NCBI GenBank assembly: GCA_965637545.1
Contig: OZ281496.1
Span: 28,644,001 to 28,708,000 of the forward strand
Origin: Phallusia mammillata
Lineage: Eukaryota
Direction: 5' to 3'
Length of the DNA: 64,000 nt
Shown: piece after piece, positions 35,681 to 59,465 of the stretch
Numbering within the stretch: position 1 is the stretch's first letter
Layout of the letters: every line of letters begins with the position of its first letter
The notes under the pieces: generated by a model
What the model saw: the letters and a program-made list of their open reading frames with translations, nothing else
Told to the model about the DNA's origin: nothing
Database searches by the model: none
Translations under genes and position numbers: made by a program

Positions 35681-38175
35681 GTATATGGTATGAGTTATCG
35701 CTAACGTAAAAATGGATCGCGGGTAATTACAGGTGTTACTGCGACCTGTTGATATTTTTTGTTGACACTTTACAAACAGTTTTTAAAAAATACATGATTA
35801 TGCAGAGCGTTAACAGTTTGCTATAATATAATCCGATTTAAGTGCCTCTCTTTTGACAGATAATCCAGAAAGCTTTTAATGTAAACTTCCATTAAAATCC
35901 GATGGATTTTAATCAAAAATTAGGGTAAGGGCAGTTTGTCAATAATTCAAACTGTCCAGCAGTTTGGGGCTTTTAACAAATGGACAAATAGGTCAGACTA
36001 GATACTTCATATTTTTAGGTTTCTAGTTTCTTGAGTCATGCTATCAGGGTACAGTAAAAAAGTGGTAAAGCTCAAATTGTGCTGGAACAAACCCATTTGT
36101 TGTAGTTAGGAGAAATTACCATCTTGCGGCGATGCATCGATAAACAGCCCATGATCAGGTTTCTATTAACAGACACTGTAGAAGAGACTATGCGGCCACT
36201 GCGGTGTGTATTATCGCTAAAGATGATTGTAATCAAATCCTGATGTGTGTAAAGATAGCAACCAAAACGACTTTAAGCACCAAAGCCGTGCTTACGTATT
36301 AACCACATTGTGATAGAGTCATCATGGCATTAATGTTTAAATTTAGATGCTCCAGACAAGAAAAGCGTTGAATGTACTTTGGTGCTTGTTTTATTAGCAG
36401 AATTGATAGATATATATTAATTAATTGGCCAATATATCGATTTATATGGATTTGTTTTACAGTTAACACGCAAAAACCTACCTAGTTGCTTCAAATTTTA
36501 AGCAAGTAAAATAATGACTTTCCTGTGCATTAATCATGGAAAAATCCAGCCTGTGGTTGGATTCGAACCGATGACAGGAGTTAATGAATTTTTGTTTATC
36601 TTTCCTGTACAGCGTCATTTGAAATGCACCACAACAAATTTTATGAGTTGCAAAAGTAATTTTTACTGTACGGGTATTTACAATTGTATTCAATTGGGTC
36701 CACAAACATACATCTGTTTAACTGTCATTTGAATTGCACATGCATCTATTTTTTTCTGATTTTTAACTCCATGGTTTTCAATGAGTAGTAAAACCCACGA
36801 AAAGGCTCCCAGCAAACACCATCGGCATATGAGTTATGCGGACCACCAAAGTAATAACCATTGGGATTGCCAGCGTGGCAATGTGTGAACCATCCACCAC
36901 CTTTGTAAGTCTGAGCACAATTTCCTAAATCCGTATCTTGATCTCTGTCCTTTGTGGAGAATCTAGTACCAGTGGGTTCCAACCCATTACCTTTAACAAG
37001 TTGCAATCCATTACCTTGCAGTATGACAACAATCATCATGATTATAGGTAAAAATATTTGAGTAAAAAAAAATGTACCTGCTGGCCCGGAAAAATGTTCT
37101 TGTGTCAAGGTGTAATTGTTTCCAGAACCCACAGAAAAGTTCCTACAATAATTGAAACACGTTGTAGTTTGTGACATAATACCCTAAAAAACTCAAGCGC
37201 ATAAATATACCCGTAATATGCATAGGTTTGGTTTCCCTCAAAGTCCTCCATGTCAATTCTCATTTCATAATCGCCACTGTTTGTTAACAAGTGTAAGTTT
37301 TCAAGACCTGTAAAGCAAACGAGGTTCGCGACAATGTTGACAGGTTGAATACTCCACAACTAGCAAGTAGGTCGCAATAACAACGGTAAAATGAAAGTAG
37401 AGGTAGTAGTGAAGTAAATCCAAAGTAAGCCTCAAATGAGCCAAACTTGATGTCATTTTAACTACTTACAAGACGTATAGACTTAAAAACAAGAAATGCA
37501 TGTGGACCTGTCCAAGAAACGCTATCCGCAAGCTGATTGAAAAAAAAAACAGCCGAATTGGGCAAAGAAAAACTTTGTAACTTTGGCACTTAGCTGTGGT
37601 AAGTTATTTGGCGAGCCATTAAAATGTTGTGGCGGCGATTAGCCATATTTCTTTTTTAGACCAGTTGCATTATCATGTTTTTCACTTGGTTGTTTAAAAA
37701 ATAATCCACTGCCTCAAGTTGTTGGACAACACAGTGGAAGAAAAACCGCAAACAATTTAGAACATTTAGTCGACGGTTGTTGCACGTGTTTTGCTTTTCA
37801 ACACTCACCCAACCAGAATTCGCCATCTAGTTTTCCAAATCCGTTTACGTATTCATCCCATCCACGATCGAAGTTTTCTGAACCATCTTTTCTTTTCTGG
37901 AAAACCTATACGTACATTTTCTTCTTTACGATATGATTGTTCATGATTAATTCATTTACCCTACCAGCCATCCGCCACCGTCTGTCGCCAAATCACAGTA
38001 AACTTTGACTCCCTGACGCCCTCCAGCGAGCGGGTAAATCGTATAAACGCCACCGGTGTCGTTTGCATATCGAGGTGAAACATCTCGACAAGATTTTGGA
38101 TTGATAGCAGCTGAACATAAACGATGAAAAAAGGAAATAGTTACTGGACAAGACAGTTGATTTTTTTGGCTTTAC
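35681..38175. repeat. Segmental duplication, copy 1 (partner about 45507-47910, same orientation)
   Basis: About 1 kb of non-coding 3' flank plus the five FBG exons and most of their introns align at high identity by eye with the gene C region. Confidence 0.92.
36545..36585 (-). repeat. tRNA B-box-like fragment (possible SINE relic); duplicate at about 46371-46410, similar motif at about 35410-35435 (+)
   Basis: GGTTCGAATCC followed by aaccacagg; no A box or cloverleaf found. Confidence 0.3.
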
Positions 38176-40009
38176 TTGACAAAAATATGCAGTAGAGCTG
38201 AAGGTTGAGATATGCATCATTTGATAAAGTTTACTTCAAACAGATTAAAGCATTTGTTGAATGTTTCCTGAATAAACTGTCAACATGTTGCTCCATTTTG
38301 ACAAATTTCGATATTTTGCGTGCAATAGTCAGGAACTGAACAATATGAAAAAGCTCATTTGAAATAACCATCAAGTATTCAAATATCATTTTGACATGTT
38401 GAGAATGAAAATAATTGTCAGTTACCGCATTGTCTGCCATTTCCTGTGTAGTTTGCGTTGCATGAACATTGGAAACTACCCACTGTGTTATTGCAAGTTG
38501 CGTATTGGTGACAGTTGTGTGTTCCACTCATACATTCGTCGATGTCTAAATAAAAGTTTATTGCATGCATAACAATCTTCGTGCAACACTGAACTACTGA
38601 AAATAATTGTCAGCTACCGCATTGTCTGCCATTTCCTGTGTAGTTTGCGTTGCATGAACATTGGAAACTACCCACTGTGTTATTGCAAGTTGCGTATTGG
38701 TGACAGTTGTGTGTTCCACTCATACATTCGTCGATGTCTAAATAAAAGAGTATTGCATGCATAACAATCTTCTTGCAACACTGAACTACTTTGCTTACCA
38801 ATTTCACAGTCCTCTCCTTTGGTCCCTGGTAGACAGGAACAGAATTCCGCATCGATTCCCGACAAACATTGACCTTCGTTTTGACAGCTTCGAAAGCAAG
38901 TTTCTTCCTCTGAAAAATTGAAACAATAGGATTGTGAGTTTAACTTCTTTGTGAAACTTAGTATTGTAGCGTTGTGTAGTAAGCCAGCCCATAATATTAT
39001 TAATGCTTTGTTAATAAAAATAAAATCTACAAAAACATACCAACAAAGTTAAAAGAACTGCGCAAAATTCCACATGGCTGCGTTCCTTTACTTTCACGCA
39101 AGTAAAAGGTCACCGCCCCTCCCCTATCTGAAAGCAAATTGAATTTTAATTTTTTGAAAACAAACAAATAATAATCTACAAACCAGTTAAAACCCCTGCA
39201 TTAATAGCAGACGCACAGACAGAGGAATTGCTGTTGTACAGGTTTGTCCCACACACGTAGTTGGAACGACAACCGGAAGGACAAACCGCATGAGTGATTG
39301 AAAATTCGGAGTTCCCTTTTGTGCTGCATTTCACTATTCGCACAAGCAAACAAATTATGGTGTTTGCCTTGTAATGTAGGATATGAGAAATCTTACTTTG
39401 AAAAGAATATGTATTTGAGACAGAATCACATGATTCGCTGATTACGCCAAATCTTGTTGTGCCTTCATACTTGGGAAGTGGGTCGCTTTGAAACACTTCA
39501 AAATATCCTCCTTCCACTAAAAAATAGTTTTAACACTAATCAAAGTTGTATTTGTTACAAAGCAAATGTAAGATAAACACGATAAAAACACACTACTTAA
39601 CACAAACTTTGCATGTGTTTCAAGTTGTAAGACAATGTACGGGTTCACTGTGGGCAACACTCCGATCAAATGAGACGACTTACTGTCTATCAGTCCAGCG
39701 TGCATCGCAGCAAGACACAGAGGACCGCTGGCGTAGTCGTCAGTCCCACATAATTCTGCATGTTGCATCCAACAGCCGCCGGGACAAATTACTTTTGTGA
39801 TCGAGTGTTTCAAATCCGACAATTTTGTGTCGCATGTGGCTAAACACAAGTTAAGTCTTTCAATTCATCATGCCATATAGTGTGTAGAAAAATATTACAG
39901 CGCAGTTTTTACAGTGTAACTTTGGCAACTTGCGTGCACTACATAAACGTACCTTCATGCAGAAACATGTGGAAACTAACAATGCGAAAGCGAAAATAGT
40001 TTTATGCAT
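36746..40009 (-). CDS. Gene A: putative secreted LCCL-LCCL-EGF-cbEGF-cbEGF-fibrinogen-domain protein (first junction unresolved)
   Basis: Exons: 40009-39953 ([19 protein letters not shown], signal-like; phase-0 donor does not fit the next exon); 39839-39684 and 39516-39397 (LCCL1: [44 protein letters not shown]); 39333-39184 and 39127-39041 (LCCL2, shortened); 38909-38799 (EGF); 38737-38618 and 38545-38426 ([17 protein letters not shown] cbEGF); FBG 38110-37965, 37905-37809, 37307-37211, 37142-37078, 36990(or 37014)-36746. The frame is open from 39839 to the stop. Confidence 0.85.
38407..38790. repeat. 192-bp tandem duplication of a cbEGF exon plus intron
   Basis: The two 120-nt exons are identical; the flanking intron parts differ at only a few bases. 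Confidence 0.95.
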
Positions 40010-40522
40010 TTTTGGTAAACGTGCTTTGCAAGGAATACTACCTCTTGTGTAGAGCATGTTTGTACACATATGGTGCCTAGTATAATTTCATACAGGCGGT
40101 ATTTTTATCATTAATGTGATAATGTAATAAGTCAGTCAAAACGATCAACTAATGGATGGATTCTTTCTAATGGATTCTTTGAATAAACAATTACTCGTGT
40201 ATGACGTAACATAAGGTATAGATTAAAAAATGCAAAAAGGTTTGCAACAAAACAAAAATAAAACAGAAAAGTCATAGATAAACAAGGCAGTGAAACTAAT
40301 AATAAAGATTAACACAAGTACATTGAAGAGGCCTTAAATGCACACGAACCTGGAAGCGAGATTTAAAATGAATTGTAAAACAAATAACAAACAAAGCAAA
40401 TTGGACAGTAACCTTATCGTCTAAACGTCATTTTACAAAAGAAAAAACTAGTTCATATTACGACTGTACATATTCTGAACAAGAATATACCTATATTTCT
40501 ACCGATGTGCAAAAGTTTAAAC

Positions 40523-41000
40523 CAGGGTTCTTCAACGGGGGCGATTTCGTCCACCGAGGGGGCGATGTTGACAATTTGTGAAATTGGGGGGCGATTTTAC
40601 TTCAAAGGGGGGCGATTTCAACATTACTGATTGTATAAATACGTATAGAAAACTGTAATACGTATAAAAAACTTTAACTTGCAAGCAAATTTTATTCGTC
40701 TTGCAAACAAACACCAGGGACAAAGGGTGCATCAGCTTAAACATGCTGTTATTGAAATATATTGTTTTTACCGCCGATTGTTTGTATTTTTTGTGATCTC
40801 GAGAGCAAGGTTTGGCATTCAATTTGTTATTTGACAGAGAGGACACTTTATTAAGAAGCTTTCGTGTTGCTAGGTGAATCTAACCGCCCACATCTGCTCA
40901 AGTAGCAGAACTTTTATCCAAATAACAGTATCACAGGAGGCGATTCTGAGCCAGTCCCTTAAAAAGGGGGCGATTTCGTCGAAAAGGTTGAAGACCCCTG
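40523..41000. mobile_element. hAT (Charlie/Buster-like) MITE
   Basis: TIR CAGGGTTCTTCAAC...GTTGAAGACCCCTG; perfect TSD GTTTAAAC (40515-40522, 41001-41008) with central TA; subterminal gggggcgattt repeats. Confidence 0.92.
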
Positions 41001-42132
41001 GTTTAAACATTACCTGTTGTTGTTATAATAGGTTAAAAAAAGAAAAAAAGGGTTACTTGTTTTTTATTGTACCTTGCAAGGATACACTTCCTTGAAAATG
41101 TGATAAAATCCGCACCAGCAAAACGTAAAAACCAATAACCCAATTCAGTGCCTTATCCATTATGAAAATTCTGCAGTCTTAAAATGACACAAATGTATTA
41201 GTCTAAAATTCTACTTAAAATATGTTCAGTCAAGTCTTAGTGTAGCCCGGCAATATCTTGTAAACAACCTTGATTCTACGAGTTGCTAATTGCAGGTTGG
41301 TTAACACATAGACAGGTTAAGCAAATTATTTTTGGCTTATCACACGAAAATGTTAAGTCCCTTAGACATTTTCCAAAACAAGTAATATAATAATCCTGTT
41401 TCTGAAAGCAATTTAAAGCTAACAATATTTACAGAAGCCAAGTATCTTACTGCACTGCTGAGATGCGACCGAACAACAGTAAACATGATTAATAAGTGAT
41501 GAGCATCGAGTTTAAGACCAACGTCTGTTGAAACAACGATTTAATGTTTATGACCAACGTCAGAAAAAAAAAACGATTTAGTTAAACGCCATTCGGGCCA
41601 TAAGAGTTAAATGTACTTTTATAGCTTATGATCATGCTACTTTACTCTACATATAAATGCAATTTGGCAGTTGGTTAGGTTTAAAGCAGTGCATTTGCTA
41701 TTTGAATGTCTGACGTAAGTAACTAACAACGGAAGTCAACAACTATATTAACTCTTAGTACAGGTTTAGTTTGTACTAAAAAAATTACAGACAGGTAATT
41801 TTTTTTTGTATTTATTTTACTGCCCAAGAAATACAAAACGTGCTTTATAATGGCCGAAGGTTTGTAAAATTAAATTGCAATATAATTAAGGCTTATTTTG
41901 TAGGTAGCAAATGTACTACAAGTTGGAAAGCAAACAAAGTCACAAATAAACAGAAAACTGAGTTGATGTGGATTGGTTCCCAGGTTCACATTTAAAAAAA
42001 ATGTCGGACATTTATATTAGCTGAAACCTTTTTCGTCGAACGTATCGCCAACTTTATAGAAACAAGTTAATAATCAACAAATGAGTTTTGTGTTTTGCTT
42101 AGCAACGAACGAGAAAGTCGAAATCGTCTTAC

Positions 42133-42232
42133 TTTGAAACGAGTAGGTGAATGAAGCAGAAAAGCATGCTTCGCTGGTCACGCCGTAACTGGATGTGCCT
42201 ACGTATTTGGACAGTGGATCACTTTTGAACAG
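42133..42232 (-). pseudogene. 5'-truncated LCCL C-terminal-half exon relic
   Basis: Translates LFKSDPLSKYVGTSSYGVTSEACFSASFTYSFQ followed by an A|gtaag donor; paralogous to gene A exon 39516-39397 ([33 protein letters not shown]). No acceptor; it is fused to gene B sequence on the other strand. Confidence 0.8.
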
Positions 42233-44078
42233 ACGAGCCAAAAAGAGATGGTCCCAATGCAAGTCTGAAAACCTTCTGCGTTTTAAGGACTCTAATTCAT
42301 TGGGTCAATAGTTGGCTGTTACGTTTTGGTAAGAATAAATTTTTAGTTGTAATTTTATGTAAAAACACTATTTTTAAATTCATGTTGACCCAGGTGTTCA
42401 CCACGAAGCCAAACAGCAATCTCGGTAAGTTTGGGATTATTATTTTTTACAAATTGTGAATTAAAAAAAATGTAAAAGCTTCATGGTTTAAGAACATTAA
42501 TATGTTCATCAAAACAGTAATATATAATGTGGAGTTTAATACATCTGTAAAGATTTAGGTGAAAAAGAATTAGAACAACTCGCGACGGAGTTACACAAAA
42601 GATTAAATCAAACAGAAGGTGAGATTTGCATTTGATTTAAAAAATGTAAGCTAATGGAATGGAATGTAACAAAACCCTGTTAACGCTGTTTAATAGGTCC
42701 AAGCAATGCGGCGGAACAATGCGAATGTGATGTAGAAATCGAACTTCAAAACAAGTTGCAGCAACTCCACGCAAGACTTGCCAAAGTTGAAGGTAAAAAT
42801 TGTTTGCAAATTAATCCATGCCAAAAATATTCATATACGTTTTGAACATTTATGCCCAGCTTTCATCAACCCAACGTCTTGTCGGGATGTTGCACCTCGC
42901 CATGCATACGACACCGGCGGCGTTTATACGATTTATCCACTTACTGGAAGGCGTCAGGGAGTCATAGTTTACTGTGATTTGGTTACAGACGGCGGTGGAT
43001 GGCTGGTAGGGCAAATTTCTTTTTTAATAACTTAATAGATACAAAAGAAACTTCGTAAAGTGAAATTGAATCAACAGGTTTTCCAGAAAAGGTAAGATGG
43101 CTCAGAAAACTTTAACCGCGGATGGGATGATTACGTCAAAGGATTTGGGAAACTAAATGGCGAGTTCTGGTTGGGTGAGTGACAATTTTTTTATTATTTA
43201 GGATCGATGTAATTTCGCGCGTGAATAGAATCGAACTGCTTATGTTGAGTTTTTTCATGTAAATTTATTGTTTACAAAACTTTCACAAATATTTACCATT
43301 TTCCGGTAGTACGCTAACGCGAGTTAATTTTTACGTACCAATGTCAATATTTCTACACAACGCAAACCTTGACCAATTTAAAGGAACCCAATTTGCTTTA
43401 CAGGTCTTGAAAACTTGCACTTGATAACAAACAGTGGCGATTACGAAATGAGAATTGATATGGAGGATTTTGAAGGGAAACAAAACTTATGCTCATTACG
43501 GGTAGCAATGCAAAATTTAAAACGTGATGTTTAAGAGTGACCAATTATCTTCCATTTTATTAGAAAATTTTCCGTCGGTCCAGGAAGTAATTATACCTTG
43601 ACACAAGGCAGTTTTTCCGGTCCAGCAGGTAACTTTTTTTCTCAATCATAAAATTCATACTTTGTCAACGTCAAAAACATCTACCTGTTTGAACCACTAC
43701 AAACAATCTTTTGTTATGTCAAAAACAATTTAACCGTTGTTGAAACATGCCTTAAGATTTTTATGCTTATCTAACAGTTAGTTTTTGTCTGTTTTTCTAT
43801 GCATGACGTTTTGGATTTTTACCTTTTATGAAGGTAATGGTATGCGACCCACTGGTGCCAGATTCTCCACCGAGGACAGAGACCAGGACACATGGCCAAA
43901 AAATTGTGCTCAGTCTTACAAAGGGGGTTGGTGGTTTACAAATTGCCACAGTGGAAATCCCAATGGTTATTACTATGGTGGTCCGCATGACTCATATGCA
44001 GATGGTGTTTGCCAGAGTCCGTTTCGTGGGAATTACTACTCATTGAAAACCATGGAGATGAAAATTAGAAGAAAGTAA
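42227..44078 (+). pseudogene. Gene B: type II membrane FReD pseudogene (collagen-less subtype)
   Basis: Exons about 42227-42328, 42394-42424, 42553-42618, 42697-42792, 42860-43005, 43078-43174, 43404-43501, 43564-43628, 43834-44078. Lesions: 5' truncation, 11-nt deletion in the TM exon (after 42297), in-frame TAA at 43093-43095, and a +1 frameshift near 43475 (98-nt exon versus 97 in paralogs). Confidence 0.9.
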
Positions 44079-45360: not shown

Positions 45361-45506
45361 ATGTACAGGAACGTTTGCAGAAATTAGTAAACTTTAACTT
45401 GAGTTTTACTGCTAAAAAGTTTGAGTCTCTAGAATAGGTAAACATTGTAAAAATCATTAAATGTCCAAAGGAGAAGCTACTGCATCGTTAACGGACTTAT
45501 AATACG

Positions 45507-47910
45507 TGTATGGTAAGAGTTATCGCTAACGTATGAATGGATCGCGGGTAATTACAGGTGTTACTGCGACCTGTTGAAATTTTTTGTTGACACTTTACAA
45601 ACAGTTTTTAAAAATATCTGATTATGCAGAGCGTTAACAGTTTGCTATAATATAATCCGATTTAAGCGCCTCTCTTTTGACAGATAATACTGGAAGCTTT
45701 GAACATAAACTTCCATTAAAATCCAATGGATTTTAATCAAAAATTACGGTAAGGGCGGTTTGTCACTAATTCAAACTGTCCAGCAGTTTGGGGCTTTCAA
45801 CAAATGGACGAATAGGCCAGACTTGATACTTTATATTTTTTTGGTTTCTAGTTTCTTAAGTCATGCTATCAGGGTACAGTAAAAAGTGGTAAAGCTCAAA
45901 TTGCGCTGGAACAAACCTACTTGTTGTAGTTAGGAGAAATTACCATCTTGTGGCGATGCAGCGATAAACAGCCCATGATCAGGTTTCTATTAACAGACAT
46001 TGTAGAAGAGACTATGTGGCCACTGCGGTGTGTATTATCGCTAAAGATGATCGTAATCAAATCCTGATGTGTGTAAAGATAGCAACCAAAACGACTTTAA
46101 GCACCAAAGCCGTGCTTACGTATTAACCACATTGTGATAGAGTCATCATGGCATTAATGTTCAAATTTAGATGCTCCAGACAAGAAAAGCGTTGAATGTA
46201 CTTTGGTGCTTGTTTTATTAGCAGAATTGATATATATATATTAATTAATTGGCCAATATATCGATTTATATGGATTTGTTTTACGGTTAACACGCAAAAA
46301 CGCACCTAGTTGCTTCAAATTTTAAGCAAGTAAAATAATGACTTTCCTGTACATTAATTTTAGAAAAAAACAGCCTGCGGAGGGATTCGAACACATGACA
46401 GGAGTGAATGAATTTTTGTTTATCTTTCCTGTACAGTGTCATTTGAAATGCACCACAACAAATTTGAGTCGCTAAAGTAATGTTTACTACGGGTATTCTC
46501 AATTGTATTCAATTGGGTCCACAAACATACAGTCGTTTAGTTTTTATTTGAATAGCACATGCATTTATTTTTTTCTGATTTTCAACTCCATGGTTTTCAA
46601 TGAGTAGTGGTAGCCTCGAAAAGGCTCCCAGCAAACACCATCTGCATATGAGTCATGCGGACCACCATAGTAATAACCATTGGGATTGCCACCATGACAG
46701 TTTGTAAACCACCAACCACCTTTGAATGACTGAGCACAATTAGATGAGTAAGTATCCTGGTCCCTGTCCTTGGTGGAGAATCTAGTTCCGGTGGGTTGCA
46801 ATCCATTACCTTTAACCAACGTATAAGTTTCGTTAATGAAAACCTAGTTTCGTGAACCTAAAATACAAATCATTCTTCATTGCAGTATGACAACAACCAC
46901 AATGATTATAGGTGCAAAGAGTTGAGAAAAGAATATGTACCTGCTGGCCCGGAAAAATGTTCTTGTGTCAAGGTGTAATCGTTTCCAGAACCCACAGAAA
47001 AGTTCCTAGAATAATTGAAACACGTTGTATTTTATGACATAATACCCTAAAAAACTCAAGCGCATAAATATACCCATAATATGCATAAGTTTTGTTTCCC
47101 TCAAAGTCCTCCATGTCAATTCTCATTTCATATTCGCCACTGTTTGTTATCAAGTGTAGGTTTTCAAGTCCTGGAAAGTAAACAAGGTTGGTGACAATGT
47201 TGACAGGTCAAATACTCCACAACTGCGAAGTTAATCCCTAAATGAGCCAACATTTGATGTCATTTAACTGCTTACAAGACGCATGCATGTAAAAACACCA
47301 AAAACAGTCGGCAACTCGATCTTAGAGATCCTAGCCTAGTTGAGAAAGAAACTGCCACTTTGGTACTTAGTTGTGGTAAGTTCCATTACGTTAGAGCCAT
47401 TAAAACGTTACGGTAGGGAATATTCATGCGTCTTTGATCAAAATCAACAATTTTTAGCTGTTGCATGGAAAACAATAATCAAAATGAATTTAGAACATTC
47501 GGTTTGGCGGTCGTTGCACGTGAAATGCTTCTAAACTCTTACCCAACCAGAACTCGCCGTCTAGTTTCCCAAATCCGTTCACGTAATCATCCCATCCACG
47601 ATCGAAGTTTTCCGAGCCATCTTTCCTTTTTTGGAACACCTGTACGTACATTTTCTTCTTTACGATATGATTGTTCATGATCAATTCATTCAACCTATAC
47701 CAGCCATCCGCCACCGTCTGTCACCAAATCACAGTAAACTTTGACTCCCTGACGCCCTCCAGCGAGCGGGTAAATCGTATAAACGCCACCGGTGTCGTTT
47801 GCATATCGAGGTGAAACATCTCGACAAGATTTTGGATTGATAGCAGCTGAACATAAACGATGAAAAAAGGAAATAGTTACTGGACAAGACAGTTTATTTT
47901 TCTTTTGACT
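45507..47910. repeat. Segmental duplication, copy 2 (partner about 35681-38175)
   Basis: Same non-coding and FBG sequence as copy 1; homology ends in the intron upstream of the first FBG exon. Confidence 0.92.
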
Positions 47911-48542
47911 TGACAAATAACTGGTTTCTGAATTAACTTCCAACCACCTTCAGCTCTTGCAAGTCTCTCTTCAAGTTGCTGCATCTTGTTTCGAAGTTCG
48001 ATTTCAGAATCACATTCGCATTGTTTCGCCGCGTCGCCTTTATCTCCCTTGGGACCGGGAAATCCTCGTGGACCTGTCAAATGATTATGTTTACTAGCCG
48101 AGTGCTTGTCTTTCCAAATAATGAGATTGATAGAAAAGTAAAGTCAAAATAAGTTTAAAAAACTCCTCGTGAAATCGGCCATAGTTAAATCGCAAACATA
48201 TGCTGGTCACCAATCAACAACTACGTGTTTGATTATTGAGACATAATTGTTAATCACACTTTTGTTGCCTTTTGTATGTTGCGAAATGCTTGGAGGGCTG
48301 ATTTAGATTCGGTTTACTCATCTTGAAGCATGTTGCTATATGTTTGTCTTACCTCTTTTGCCTGGTGGGCCTCGACCAAAGCTTGACATTGTGCCTGTAT
48401 TTGATTGATTATTCGATAAAGATCTTTGAAACACTTCATGCAAACTTCCACACTGAAAATTCACTGAACATGATTCCAAGTTAATGTGACCGCTTGCAGC
48501 AGCGAGAAACAACAAAACCAGCAAAAAGTGTTTGGGAGCCAT
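46565..48542 (-). CDS. Gene C: secreted ficolin-like protein (signal peptide, Cys segment, short collagen, CEC/coiled coil, FBG), about 321 aa
   Basis: Exons 48542-48353, 48073-47948, 47846-47701, 47639-47543, 47170-47074, 47005-46941, 46809-46565; 966 nt, open frame. Signal [18 protein letters not shown]; collagen [21 protein letters not shown]; FBG motifs [42 protein letters not shown]. Confidence 0.92.
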
Positions 48543-50177: not shown

Positions 50178-52567
<2,390 letters not shown>

Positions 52568-54085: not shown

Positions 54086-56219
54086 ATGATGAATATTTAC
54101 GAAACGCCGGATCTAAATGGTATAAAGTGGTTTTGTGTTTTGTATGAGCGCTTTAAAATCAGAACGAATTTTGTTTTGGGGTATGATGAAATGCATATCC
54201 GAGGCGTAAAATTCATAAAAAATGTCAAATTTATAAAAAATAATGTGCGAATTTTCCAAAAAAACGTACAAAAAGATTAGACAATAAACTGAGTTGATAA
54301 TATTTTTAACTATAGGTGAAAAGGGTCAACCAGCAACAGAGATTAAAAAAGAAGGTTACATTCCAAGTGTGTCAAGCCCATCCAAGTCAATCAAGTTCGG
54401 CGTTATGATTGCTGTTGTCTTGTGCGTTGTAATAGGGTTGGTAGTTGGCAGCTACGTTTTGGTAACTATACTTTTTTAGTTTGCAATTATGGATGGAAAA
54501 TTATAATTTAAAAGTTCAAAATTGACCCAGGTGTTCACCGCGAAGACTAAAGGCAATCTCGGTAAGTTTAAGAAAATTTACAAATTATGTGCTTAAATCC
54601 GATTTGAATCAATAAAACAATTTGACAACAATAATACAGTGTCGGGTTCAATACATCTGCAAACATTTAGGTGCAAGAGAATTAGAACAACTAGCGACGG
54701 AGATACAGAAAAGATTGAATCAGACAGAAGGTAGGAACTTGTATTTAACCTGAGAAATTCAAGCTGGTGGCAAAAAATAACCTTTTGACACTGTTTGACA
54801 GGACCAAGGGGATTTCCCGGTCCCAAGGGAGACAAAGGCGACGCAGCAGAACAATGCGAATGTGATTCTGAAATCGAACTTCGAAAAATGTTGCAGCAAC
54901 TACAATGGAGACTTGCCAAGGCTGAAGGTATTTGGGAAGATTGTTCACAAAGTAATGTCTGCTATTACATGCACGCTTTACGTTTTTTAACATTCATGTT
55001 TAGCTTCCATCAACCCAACGTCTTGTCGAGATGTTGCACCTCGCTACGCAAACGACACCGGCGGCGTTTATACGATTTATCCACTCACTGGAGGACGACA
55101 GGGATTCAAAGTTTATTGCGATTTGGTGACAGACAGTGGCGGATGGCTGGTAGGGTGAATGTCTCTTTTATTAACCAAATAAAACGAAATTTTACTTAGT
55201 AAAGCAAACCTGAATCAACAGATATTCCAGAAAAGGAAAGATGGGTCAGAAAACTTTAACCGTGGGTGGGTTGATTATGTGAACGGATTTGGGAAACTAG
55301 ATGGCGAATTCTGGTTGGGTAAGTGGGCATGCTTTTTCAGTTGGAATCTGTAGTGTTTACAATTAAATGATCTCTATGTAAACAGTATATCACGTGACCG
55401 TATGTGACCACGCCGTATCTATGAGCGCGAGCAATAGCGAAAGCATATAAACAAACATTTTGTGTTATGCCTATAGTCTCTAACACAGCACTAGGCAGCA
55501 GAACGTGTGTGAATGGAATGGAACTGCTAATGATAATTTTTTTCATGTAAATTTATTGTTTACAAAAACCTACAAAAGTATTTAACACTTTATTGCACCA
55601 CTCGTAATAGTTTCTACCTACTGCAAACCCTTGACCAGTTTACAGCAAACTAATTTGCTTTCCAGGTCTTGAAAACTTACACTTGATAACAAGTAGTGGA
55701 GATTATGAAATGAGAGTTGACATGGAGGACTTTGAAGGAAACAAATCTTTTGCATATTATGGGTAAGGGTGTGATTTTACAACATGAATAATACTTTGCA
55801 CTAAAACCTATTTTATCATTAGGATTTTTTCTGTCGGCCCAGGAAACGATTATGTCTTAACACGAGAACATTTTTCCGGGCCAGCAGGTACATTTTTTTT
55901 TACTCAAATATTTTTACCTATAATCATGATGATTGTTGTCATACTGCAAGGTAATGGATTGCAACTTGTTAAAGGTAATGGGTTGGAACCCACTGGTACT
56001 AGATTCTCCACAAAGGACAGAGATCAAGATACACATTCAGGAAATTGTGCTCAGACTTACAAAGGTGGTGGATGGTTCACACATTGCCACGCTGGCAATC
56101 CCAATGGTTATTACTATGGTGGTCCACATGACTCATATGCTGATGGTGTTTGCTGGAGGCCATTTCGTGGGTATTACTACTCATTGAAAGCAATAGAGTT
56201 AAAAATCAGAAAAAAATAA
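54086..56219 (+). CDS. Gene E: type II membrane FReD with Tyr-containing cytoplasmic tail and collagen, about 348 aa
   Basis: Exons 54086-54119 ([11 protein letters not shown]; inferred first exon), 54316-54461 ([22 protein letters not shown]), 54531-54561, 54671-54730, 54802-54927, 55004-55149, 55222-55318, 55666-55762, 55823-55887, 55975(or 55951)-56219; open frame. Confidence 0.86.

Positions 56220-57212: not shown

Positions 57213-59465
<2,253 letters not shown>

What the first reader, a model, noticed from the sequence alone, without database searches (positions are those of the whole stretch)
36746..39839. LCCL-LCCL-EGF-cbEGF-cbEGF-FBG chimeric protein
Seen: an open frame links two LCCL domains (the second lacks the Y-x-G-x-x-R-x-G loop), three EGF modules and an FBG domain whose exons and introns are near-copies of gene C. 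Homology to C stops in the intron at about 38175, so the collagen/coiled-coil half was replaced by LCCL-EGF exons. Established: LCCL occurs in Limulus factor C and cochlin and is linked to microbial-ligand or sulfated-glycan binding. Inference: a recently assembled two-headed recognition protein. I do not recall LCCL combined with FBG in a characterised protein.
Basis: partly seen in the sequence, partly recalled or inferred. Interest (0 to 1): 0.8.

Follow-up and report, generated by a model that had tools for sequence, protein, structure and literature searches.

The report
Young LCCL-EGF-fibrinogen chimeric lectin gene
In what is probably a sea-squirt genome, the front half of an LCCL-EGF gene was joined to a copy of the neighbouring ficolin-like gene's sugar-binding head; it is a clear case of exon shuffling, but the design already exists elsewhere and this copy is not shown to be expressed.

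Summary
The DNA observation holds. On the minus strand, 13 GT-AG exons (41160-36746) give one 541-codon frame: signal peptide, two LCCL domains, one EGF, two identical calcium-binding EGFs and a full fibrinogen-type (FBG) head.

The head lies in a 2.5-kb duplicate of neighbour gene C (35681-38183 matches 45506-47917). Homology stops in the intron 73 nt before the first FBG exon. The last intron and exon instead match gene E, which indicates gene conversion.

- The gene starts at 41160, not 39839.
- A relic fourth-EGF exon (38335-38280) sits between the EGF and FBG exons. It has a good acceptor and an in-frame TGA, so the fusion protein needs this exon skipped.
- LCCL-LCCL-EGF-FBG is not unique. 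Two Phallusia mammillata 'ficolin-2-like' entries and one amphioxus model carry it, and this scan noted the family before on other pieces of this genome.

RNA-type contigs from four runs came from 95-99% similar paralogs, in which the cbEGF exon is spliced to a relic-like exon. None lay on the FBG exons.

Verdict: a real, young genomic fusion and a new member of an unstudied family. Expression and function are unproven, and interest is moderate.

The parts
41073..41160 (-). Exon 1: start codon and signal peptide (29 codons + 1 nt, donor AAG|GTACAA, phase 1)
   Evidence: This is the best hydrophobic ATG exon in phase with exon 2 (sequence). The exon that a paralog's RNA contig carries upstream of exon 2 aligns to its last 30 nt (21/30, same end ...TGCAAG).
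39684..39839 (-). Exon 2: first half of LCCL domain 1
   Evidence: Pfam LCCL E 7.5e-7. 63% identical to the same place in Phallusia P0016. The exon 2/3 junction is used in paralog transcripts.
39397..39516 (-). Exon 3: second half of LCCL domain 1 (holds Y-E-G-T-T-R-F-G)
   Evidence: Pfam LCCL E 0.021, profile positions 61-93; phase 1-1.
39184..39333 (-). Exon 4: first half of LCCL domain 2
   Evidence: Pfam LCCL E 1e-8.
39041..39127 (-). Exon 5: shortened second half of LCCL domain 2
   Evidence: No Pfam hit. It aligns to LCCL second halves with a 4-5 residue gap and no C-terminal strand, as in Phallusia LCCL2.
38799..38909 (-). Exon 6: EGF module with six Cys, not calcium-binding
   Evidence: Pfam hEGF/EGF hits at E about 1e-3, below the cut-off. 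Paralog contigs show the same exon borders.
38618..38737 (-). Exon 7: calcium-binding EGF
   Evidence: Pfam EGF_3 5.5e-13 and EGF_CA 8.8e-12.
38426..38545 (-). Exon 8: second calcium-binding EGF, from a 192-nt tandem duplication of exon 7 plus its intron
   Evidence: 193-nt repeat at 97.9% identity. The exons are 120/120 identical, and all 4 differences lie in the 73 intron nt.
38280..38335 (-). Relic of a fourth EGF exon: intact acceptor, 17 codons, then an in-frame TGA and no usable donor
   Evidence: Translation. 26/28 nt identical to the exon that follows the cbEGF exon in paralog transcripts. Using its acceptor stops the frame after 335 aa.
38184..38279 (-). About 100 nt between the relic and the C-like block, holding the recombination joint; origin unknown
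   Evidence: No match to gene C or anything else in the window.
35681..38183 (-). Duplicate of neighbour gene C (45506-47917): last 73 nt of its stalk/FBG intron, the FBG exons, introns and 1 kb of 3' flank
   Evidence: blastn 85-95%. Per segment: exon 10 99%, introns 92-96%, flank 90-95%. Alignment of the border.
37965..38110 (-). Exon 10: start of the FBG domain (phase-1 acceptor, compatible with the EGF exons)
   Evidence: Pfam Fibrinogen_C 2.2e-6, profile positions 2-44. 145/146 identical to gene C.
37809..37905 (-). Exon 11: FBG
   Evidence: Pfam 1.8e-10.
37211..37307 (-). Exon 12: FBG
   Evidence: Pfam 4.5e-6.
37078..37142 (-). Exon 13: FBG
   Evidence: 98% identical to gene C; in frame.
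36746..37014 (-). Exon 14: FBG P subdomain with calcium site and acetyl pocket, then the stop codon
   Evidence: Pfam 1.2e-20. Best solved relative is tachylectin-5A, 1jc9, E 7e-24, with pocket residues conserved.
36746..37077 (-). Gene-conversion tract shared with gene E (55888-56219, + strand)
   Evidence: Intron 13 is 63/63 and exon 14 95% identical to E, against 84% and 86% to C.
42128..42235 (-). Solitary decayed copy of an LCCL second-half exon, upstream of exon 1
   Evidence: tblastn 61-63% aa identity and blastn 73% nt identity to exon 3. No other LCCL/EGF relic is nearby.

Best explanation
This is a young, locus-specific member of the LCCL-LCCL-EGF-FBG family also seen in ascidians, made by exon shuffling at the DNA level.

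Origin. The 5' part of an LCCL-EGF paralog was joined to a 2.5-kb duplicate of the neighbouring ficolin-like gene C. That 5' part runs from the signal-peptide exon through two LCCL domains, one EGF and the cbEGF exon, up to the first third of a fourth EGF exon. The joint lies in the intron between C's collagen/coiled-coil stalk and its FBG head. All LCCL/EGF exons are phase 1-1 and C's first FBG exon has a phase-1 acceptor. So splicing exon 8 directly to exon 10 keeps one 541-codon frame.

Later changes. The cbEGF exon was duplicated in tandem. The last intron and exon were overwritten by gene conversion from gene E.

Inferred function. If the relic exon is skipped, the product is a secreted, stalk-less lectin. 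Its FBG head keeps the calcium site and the tachylectin-5A-type acetyl-group pocket. A rigid cbEGF spacer would link it to a tandem LCCL module. Having lost the collagen stalk, it would not oligomerise or recruit proteases as ficolins do. It would more likely act as a bivalent bridging or agglutinating molecule.

What is shown and what is inferred. Shown: the exon structure, domain identities, duplication borders, conversion tract and relatives. Inferred: splicing past the relic, secretion and ligand binding.
For: Gene model: 13 exons with canonical sites and a 1626-nt frame with a single terminal stop.

Domains: Pfam hits on the separate exons.

Block and border: the C-like block and its border at 38183. 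Gene C itself has a signal peptide, 7 Gly-X-Y triplets and a coiled-coil exon upstream of the border.

Head origin: the head sits inside the local cluster (100/100 clade, 90% aa identity to C). It is apart from the Phallusia LCCL-FBG heads.

Paralog transcripts: they use the same exon borders (1|2, 2|3, 4|5, 5|6, 6|7, cbEGF|relic-like), so the 5' half is a copy of an expressed gene type.

Module homology: 39% identity over 222 aa to Phallusia P0016, E 3e-40.

Integrity:
- There is no stop or frameshift in 541 codons.
- The cbEGF exons are 120/120 identical while their introns differ at 4 of 73 nt.
- Against C, exons 10-13 show 13 synonymous and 6 non-synonymous differences, omega 0.12.

Pocket: D198, D200, C206, Y210, C219, H220, Y236 and A237 of tachylectin-5A are identical here, and Y248 is F. 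The residue roles are from my memory of Kairies et al. 2001.
Against: - In four RNA-type runs no contig lay on any FBG exon, and no contig matched the LCCL/EGF exons at 99% or more for over 34 nt.
- The relic exon keeps a good acceptor only 90 nt after exon 8. This gene's introns are mostly 56-167 nt, so the relic may be spliced in. That gives a stop after 335 aa and probably nonsense-mediated decay.
- Changes specific to this copy's FBG are 8 non-synonymous to 5 synonymous (omega about 0.4). My hand estimate of a binomial test gives p about 0.12, so this is not distinguishable from neutral drift.
- The low pairwise omega could come from gene conversion with working paralogs.
- The ten differences from the paralog transcripts in the LCCL/EGF exons are 7 non-synonymous to 3 synonymous.
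- The joint was not checked against independent DNA reads.
Confidence: 0.6

Rival explanations
1. The fusion is dead or dying. The locus is transcribed, if at all, as a truncated LCCL-LCCL-EGF-cbEGF-cbEGF message that ends in the relic exon. The FBG exons behind it are untranslated remains of a partial duplicate of gene C, and the long frame is only conceptual.
For: - The relic exon has an intact acceptor and an in-frame TGA.
- The paralogs do splice the cbEGF exon to the relic-like exon.
- No RNA contig lies on the FBG exons.
- Copy-specific FBG changes are compatible with neutrality.
- Neighbour gene B has an in-frame stop, so dead copies occur in this cluster.
- An earlier scan note says about half the copies of the family elsewhere in this genome are dead (I did not check this).
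Against: - There is no stop or frameshift in any of the 13 exons.
- The phase of the joint is preserved.
- The cbEGF exons stayed identical while their introns diverged.
- All ligand-pocket and calcium residues are kept.
- Absence of contigs is not absence of RNA.
Confidence: 0.3
2. This is head replacement, not a first fusion. An older LCCL-LCCL-EGF...-FBG gene already sat here, and its own head was overwritten by a long conversion or duplication tract from gene C. The architecture is then old and only the head is new.
For: - The architecture exists in Phallusia, with a homologous LCCL-EGF module placed directly behind the signal peptide.
- Gene conversion is active in this cluster.
- A decayed LCCL exon at 42128-42235 shows that LCCL sequence has been at this place for longer than the present copy.
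- An earlier scan note describes another copy that 'took its head from the ficolin-like gene next door' (I did not check this).
Against: - The tract is 2.5 kb, runs 1 kb past the gene's end, and starts beside a truncated exon. That looks like a duplication or deletion joint rather than conversion between aligned paralogs.
- No relic of an older head lies downstream.
- What follows the relic-like exon in the paralogs is unknown.
Confidence: 0.2
3. Assembly artefact: two unrelated loci were joined in the assembly near 38200.
For: The joint lies in non-coding sequence between repeated gene families. It was not checked against raw DNA reads here.
Against: Two DNA-like runs hold 0.67-0.81 of the sampled words of both the whole gene and its 5' half, though they may be the assembly's own source. 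The phase-compatible arrangement, with the relic exon in the right order and strand, is not what a random misjoin would give.
Confidence: 0.03

Closest known systems
Phallusia mammillata 'ficolin-2-like' proteins (UniRef A0A6F9DDD3 = P0016, A0A6F9DDK6 = P0087)
   Same: Same order: signal peptide, LCCL, shortened LCCL, EGF, FBG (Pfam PF03815+PF00008+PF00147). The LCCL-EGF part is 39% identical over 222 aa, and 63% in the first LCCL exon. Like this gene, they are uncharacterised.
   Different: They have one EGF and no calcium-binding EGFs. Their FBG starts only at Pfam position 41 and has a shortened P subdomain. Their heads form a separate clade from the head here, so the heads were acquired independently or swapped.
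Branchiostoma lanceolatum 'ANGPTL1' model CAH1224589.1 (P0081)
   Same: Two LCCL domains followed by an FBG domain.
   Different: There is no EGF and no clear signal peptide, and the FBG is cut at profile position 123. It may be an imperfect gene model. Its LCCLs belong to the multi-LCCL repeat type. None of the 119 other best LCCL relatives listed carries FBG.
Ficolins and tachylectin-5A (FBG lectins for acetylated ligands)
   Same: A full FBG head. Exon 14 hits tachylectin-5A (1jc9) at E 7e-24 and ficolin-1/-2 at about 1e-21 to 1e-19, with the calcium site and acetyl pocket conserved. The parent gene C has a ficolin-like layout with a short collagen stalk.
   Different: There is no collagen-like stalk or coiled-coil neck. 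So there is no ficolin-type oligomerisation and no protease-binding site. The N-terminus is LCCL-EGF instead.
LCCL proteins: Limulus factor C, cochlin, vitrin/akhirin, CRISPLD, DCBLD
   Same: LCCL fold signature (Pfam PF03815) in a secreted multidomain protein.
   Different: Those join LCCL to protease, vWA, CAP, or CUB/discoidin domains, and none to FBG. The LCCL ligand is not settled for any of them (my background knowledge).
Plasmodium CCp/LAP proteins
   Same: These are characterised proteins that combine LCCL with the NEC module. Their authors equate NEC with the N-terminal subdomain of the fibrinogen globular domain and propose sugar binding (PMC2211786).
   Different: They carry only the NEC part, not a whole FBG. 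They have different partner domains (discoidin, ricin, levanase), come from protists, and are not related by descent to this gene.
Mollusc FREPs and EGF-FBG proteins
   Same: The same evolutionary theme: one FBG head put behind varied N-terminal modules in tandem, diversifying clusters. Atlas look-alikes of P0016 are EGF+FBG clusters from molluscs.
   Different: The N-terminal modules are IgSF or EGF only, with no LCCL.

Membership tests
FBG-domain (FReD) lectins, PF00147 | Complete fibrinogen C-terminal globular domain | tested here: met
   Four of the five FBG exons hit PF00147 (exon 13 was not submitted). The hits cover profile positions 2-109 and 148-219 of 221.
FBG-domain (FReD) lectins, PF00147 | Calcium site (D-x-D) and acetyl-binding pocket as in tachylectin-5A and the ficolins | tested here: met
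   In the alignment to 1jc9, D198, D200, C206, Y210, C219, H220, Y236 and A237 are identical and Y248 is F. The residue roles are from my memory of the literature. Binding itself was not tested.
Ficolins (strict sense) | Collagen-like stalk N-terminal to the FBG domain | tested here: not met
   The stalk exons of parent gene C have no counterpart here, because homology ends at 38183. LCCL/EGF exons take their place.
LCCL domain proteins, PF03815 | LCCL domain above the Pfam threshold | tested here: met
   Exon 2 scores 29.7 bits and exon 4 scores 35.6 bits against a cut-off of 22.6. The second half of domain 1 scores 15.4 bits on its own, and the second half of domain 2 has no hit.
Ascidian LCCL-LCCL-EGF-FBG family (Phallusia 'ficolin-2-like') | Signal peptide, two LCCL, EGF and FBG in this order in one frame | tested here: met
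   A 541-codon spliced model, valid only if the relic exon is skipped.
Ascidian LCCL-LCCL-EGF-FBG family (Phallusia 'ficolin-2-like') | Sequence homology of the LCCL-EGF module | tested here: met
   39% identity over 222 aa, E 3e-40. LCCL2 is shortened in the same way in both.
Ascidian LCCL-LCCL-EGF-FBG family (Phallusia 'ficolin-2-like') | FBG head of common descent with the family's head | tested here: not met
   The head here groups 100/100 with the local ficolin-like cluster. The Phallusia heads form a separate 99/98 clade.
Ascidian LCCL-LCCL-EGF-FBG family (Phallusia 'ficolin-2-like') | Expressed as one transcript | tested here: inconclusive
   Four RNA-type runs gave contigs of paralogs only, and none on the FBG exons. 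Contigs cannot show absence.
Calcium-binding EGF, PF07645 | D-x-D-E-C start, six Cys, Asn and an aromatic residue at the consensus places | tested here: met
   EGF_CA scores 45.5 bits against a cut-off of 27. The motif D-I-D-E-C...[10 protein letters not shown] is visible in the translation.

The most novel reading that the evidence does not exclude
The LCCL-LCCL-EGF cassette may be a recurrently shuffled N-terminal module in ascidian genomes. All its exons are phase 1-1, so it can be grafted onto different lectin-type heads: local ficolin-like FBG heads here, and other heads elsewhere in the genome according to earlier scan notes. On this reading the present copy is transcribed with the relic exon skipped and works as a two-headed secreted recognition protein. 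That would be a combinatorial way of diversifying innate recognition, distinct from mollusc FREPs.
Probability: 0.2. Interest if true: 0.6.

Novelty: new member of a known kind. Interest (0 to 1): 0.35.

Why it matters
If the fusion protein is made, it is a natural experiment. A ficolin-type acetyl-binding head has lost its oligomerising, protease-recruiting stalk and gained a tandem LCCL module whose ligand is still unknown in any animal.

The joint is young enough that both parents and the leftover half-exon are still readable. That makes it a good textbook-grade case of phase-compatible exon shuffling.

Together with the other copies the scan noted in this genome, and with the Phallusia entries, it points to an unstudied lectin family in the closest invertebrate relatives of vertebrates. 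It does not reveal a new principle.

Tried and rejected
1. First-exon candidate at 40009-39953 ([11 protein letters not shown]...). It looks like a signal peptide, but its strong donor is out of phase with exon 2. I rejected it for the exon at 41160-41073, which is in phase and resembles the paralog's upstream exon.

2. RNA contigs as evidence for this gene. They differ by 1-6%, continue into sequence unlike this locus, and come in at least two variants, so I read them as paralogs. Divergent alleles cannot be fully excluded.

3. Search for the donor LCCL-EGF gene in the window. There is none, only one decayed LCCL exon.

4. Looking for this organism's own annotated protein:
- The representative search with exon 2 gave nothing above 63% identity.
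- The word search with a mixed alignment found only Phallusia.
- The exact look-up of the exon-14 ORF was not on record.
- No fetched protein matched the window closely.

5. An alignment of all 86 LCCL hits failed in the tool. I replaced it with a local phmmer screen.

6. A cryptic donor (CAT|GTTGAC) just before the relic's stop would keep the frame as a 51-nt mini-exon. It is too weak to rely on.

7. The full spliced protein could not be given to the search or folding tools without typing it, so I did no whole-protein search and made no structure model.
Full report
**What is there.** The window is AT-rich eukaryotic DNA (GC about 0.37) with short introns. The nearest protein relatives of the exons are ascidian: Phallusia at 63% for one LCCL exon, and Clavelina at 76% for one FBG exon. 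So the source is probably a sea squirt, and earlier scan notes say the same. This is an inference, because the run names are coded.

**Gene model.** On the minus strand I built a model by hand from the three-frame translation and checked every border.
- Exons 2-8 lie between 39839 and 38426, and exons 10-14 between 38110 and 36746.
- All have AG/GT borders.
- The seven LCCL/EGF exons are multiples of three and all phase 1-1.
- The first FBG exon has a phase-1 acceptor.
- With the first exon found later, the coding sequence is 1626 nt, or 541 codons, with one terminal stop.

**Domains.** Pfam on the separate exons gives:
- LCCL for exon 2 (7.5e-7), exon 3 (0.021) and exon 4 (1e-8);
- nothing for the short exon 5;
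- weak EGF hits for exon 6;
- EGF_3/EGF_CA at about 1e-12 for exon 7;
- Fibrinogen_C for four FBG exons, down to 1.2e-20.

Exons 7 and 8 belong to a 192-nt tandem duplication. The exons are 120/120 identical, and all four differences lie in the 73 intron bases. By my hand calculation the chance of that is about 0.02. The second LCCL is a shortened form and not loop-less. It lacks 4-5 residues including the Tyr and Arg, keeps both Gly, and lacks the last strand. LCCL2 of the Phallusia relative does the same.

**First exon.** The signal-like ORF at 40009 has a strong donor that is out of phase with exon 2. A scan for ATG exons ending in a phase-1 donor gave 41160-41073, with a hydrophobic core and donor AAG|GTACAA. 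In one RNA contig from a paralog, the exon upstream of exon 2 ends ...TGCAAG. It aligns to the last 30 nt of this candidate (21/30) in the same frame, H-F-Q-R-C-A-S-M-Q against H-F-Q-G-S-V-S-L-Q. I take this as exon 1, so the gene spans 41160-36746.

**Origin of the FBG half.** The window holds seven more FBG genes or gene remains.
- The chimera matches gene C (minus strand) from 38183 down to 35681, corresponding to 47917-45506 in C. The match includes introns and 1 kb of 3' flank at 95%.
- The alignment of the border shows near-identity from 73 nt before exon 10 and nothing upstream. In gene C, the upstream sequence is the exon for Gly-X-Y triplets and a coiled coil.
- In a tree of FBG heads, the seven window heads form a 100/100 clade with the chimera next to C (90% aa identity). 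The Phallusia LCCL-FBG heads form their own 99/98 clade elsewhere.

**Origin of the LCCL-EGF half, and the relic.** Between exon 8 and exon 10 lies 38335-38280. It has a good acceptor, then 17 codons ([18 protein letters not shown]), then TGA.

I laid contigs from four RNA-type runs on 36400-42300.
- They touch only LCCL/EGF exons.
- They are 94-99% alike.
- They run on into sequence that resembles, but is not, this locus.
- After the cbEGF exon they continue with [10 protein letters not shown]... or V-P-D-F-C-A-Q-N-N-K.... The first of these is 26/28 nt identical to the relic.
- One contig has at least three cbEGF repeats.

So expressed paralogs exist with the same exon borders and an intact fourth EGF exon, and the relic is what is left of that exon here. 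The break therefore lies between about 38306 and 38183. No other LCCL/EGF exon is in the window except one decayed LCCL second-half exon at 42128-42235.

**Is the fusion protein made?** This is not shown.
- No contig lay on any FBG exon in the four runs, although contigs cannot prove absence.
- The gene's introns are mostly 56-167 nt. The relic's acceptor sits only 90 nt after exon 8, so it may well be used. The frame then stops after 335 aa.

Evidence for integrity:
- There is no stop or frameshift in 541 codons.
- The cbEGF exons are identical.
- Against C, exons 10-13 have 13 synonymous and 6 non-synonymous differences, omega 0.12.

Caution on that evidence:
- After polarising the changes with the other paralogs, changes specific to this copy are 8 non-synonymous to 5 synonymous. 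That is omega about 0.4, and my hand estimate of a binomial test gives p about 0.12 against neutrality. Gene C's own changes are 1 to 4.
- Conversion from working paralogs can mimic constraint.
- The ten listed differences from the paralog transcripts are 7 non-synonymous to 3 synonymous.

**Likely function if made.** Exon 14 is closest to tachylectin-5A (1jc9, E 7e-24), then MFAP4, FIBCD1 and ficolin-1/-2. In that alignment the two calcium-binding Asp, the Cys pair and the acetyl-pocket residues Y210, H220, Y236 and A237 are identical, and Y248 is Phe. The residue roles come from my memory of the tachylectin-5A structure paper.

I infer a calcium-dependent head for acetylated ligands, a rigid cbEGF spacer, and an N-terminal LCCL pair of unknown ligand. 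The protein would lack the stalk that lets ficolins oligomerise and bind proteases. The mature protein has 35 Cys, an odd number.

**Comparison with what is known.**
- The search of 1.84 billion representatives with exon 2 gave 86 LCCL proteins. A local screen found FBG in two of them.
- P0016 is a Phallusia mammillata 'ficolin-2-like' entry with the order SP-LCCL-LCCL-EGF-FBG. It is 39% identical over the module and has a sister entry, P0087.
- P0081 is a Branchiostoma lanceolatum model with two LCCL domains and a cut FBG.
- Of the 120 best-listed LCCL relatives of P0081, only P0081 itself carries PF00147.
- No Atlas cluster of 50 or more members shows LCCL with FBG.
- No paper in the library joins the two domains in animals.
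- The Plasmodium CCp proteins join LCCL to the NEC module, which their authors equate with the N-terminal FBG subdomain (PMC2211786).
- The scan's own notes report the same architecture several times on other pieces of this genome, including another copy said to have taken its head from a neighbouring ficolin-like gene. I did not test those notes. I had found the Phallusia entries before reading them.

**Verdict.** This is a real, young genomic fusion with readable borders. It is a further member of a rare, unstudied ascidian family, with its own head, extra cbEGF modules and a leftover half-exon that may spoil it. Expression and function are open.

Noticed in passing
window 36746-37077 and 55888-56219: Intron 13 and the last FBG exon of the chimera are 63/63 and 95% identical to gene E on the opposite strand, while the rest of the gene follows gene C. 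This is a gene-conversion tract over the ligand-binding subdomain.
   Followed up: partly
window 43078-43173 (+): The FBG gene at 42860-44078 has an in-frame stop (V-F-Q-K-R-*-D-G-S) in the exon equivalent to exon 11, so this neighbour is probably a pseudogene.
   Followed up: partly
window 42128-42235 (-): A lone decayed LCCL second-half exon (61-63% aa identity to exon 3, with about 45 nt of matching intron) lies upstream of the chimera's first exon and beside the 5' end of the + strand FBG gene. No other relic of that older copy was found.
   Followed up: partly
window 39953-40009 (-): A signal-peptide-like ORF ([17 protein letters not shown]) with a strong donor lies inside intron 1, out of phase with exon 2. 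It may be a dead alternative first exon or a chance ORF.
   Followed up: partly
window 42230-42900 versus 57648-58354, 50706-51301 and 54442-55044: The 5' region and stalk exons of the + strand FBG gene at 42.3-44.1 kb are 70-78% identical to the 5' regions of three other + strand cluster members. So the cluster grew by whole-gene tandem duplication.
   Followed up: no
RNA-type contigs of runs X15, X16, X19 and X8 laid on window 38426-39841: At least two expressed paralogs of the LCCL-EGF half exist in this species. One has three or more cbEGF repeats, so the cbEGF copy number varies within the family.
   Followed up: partly
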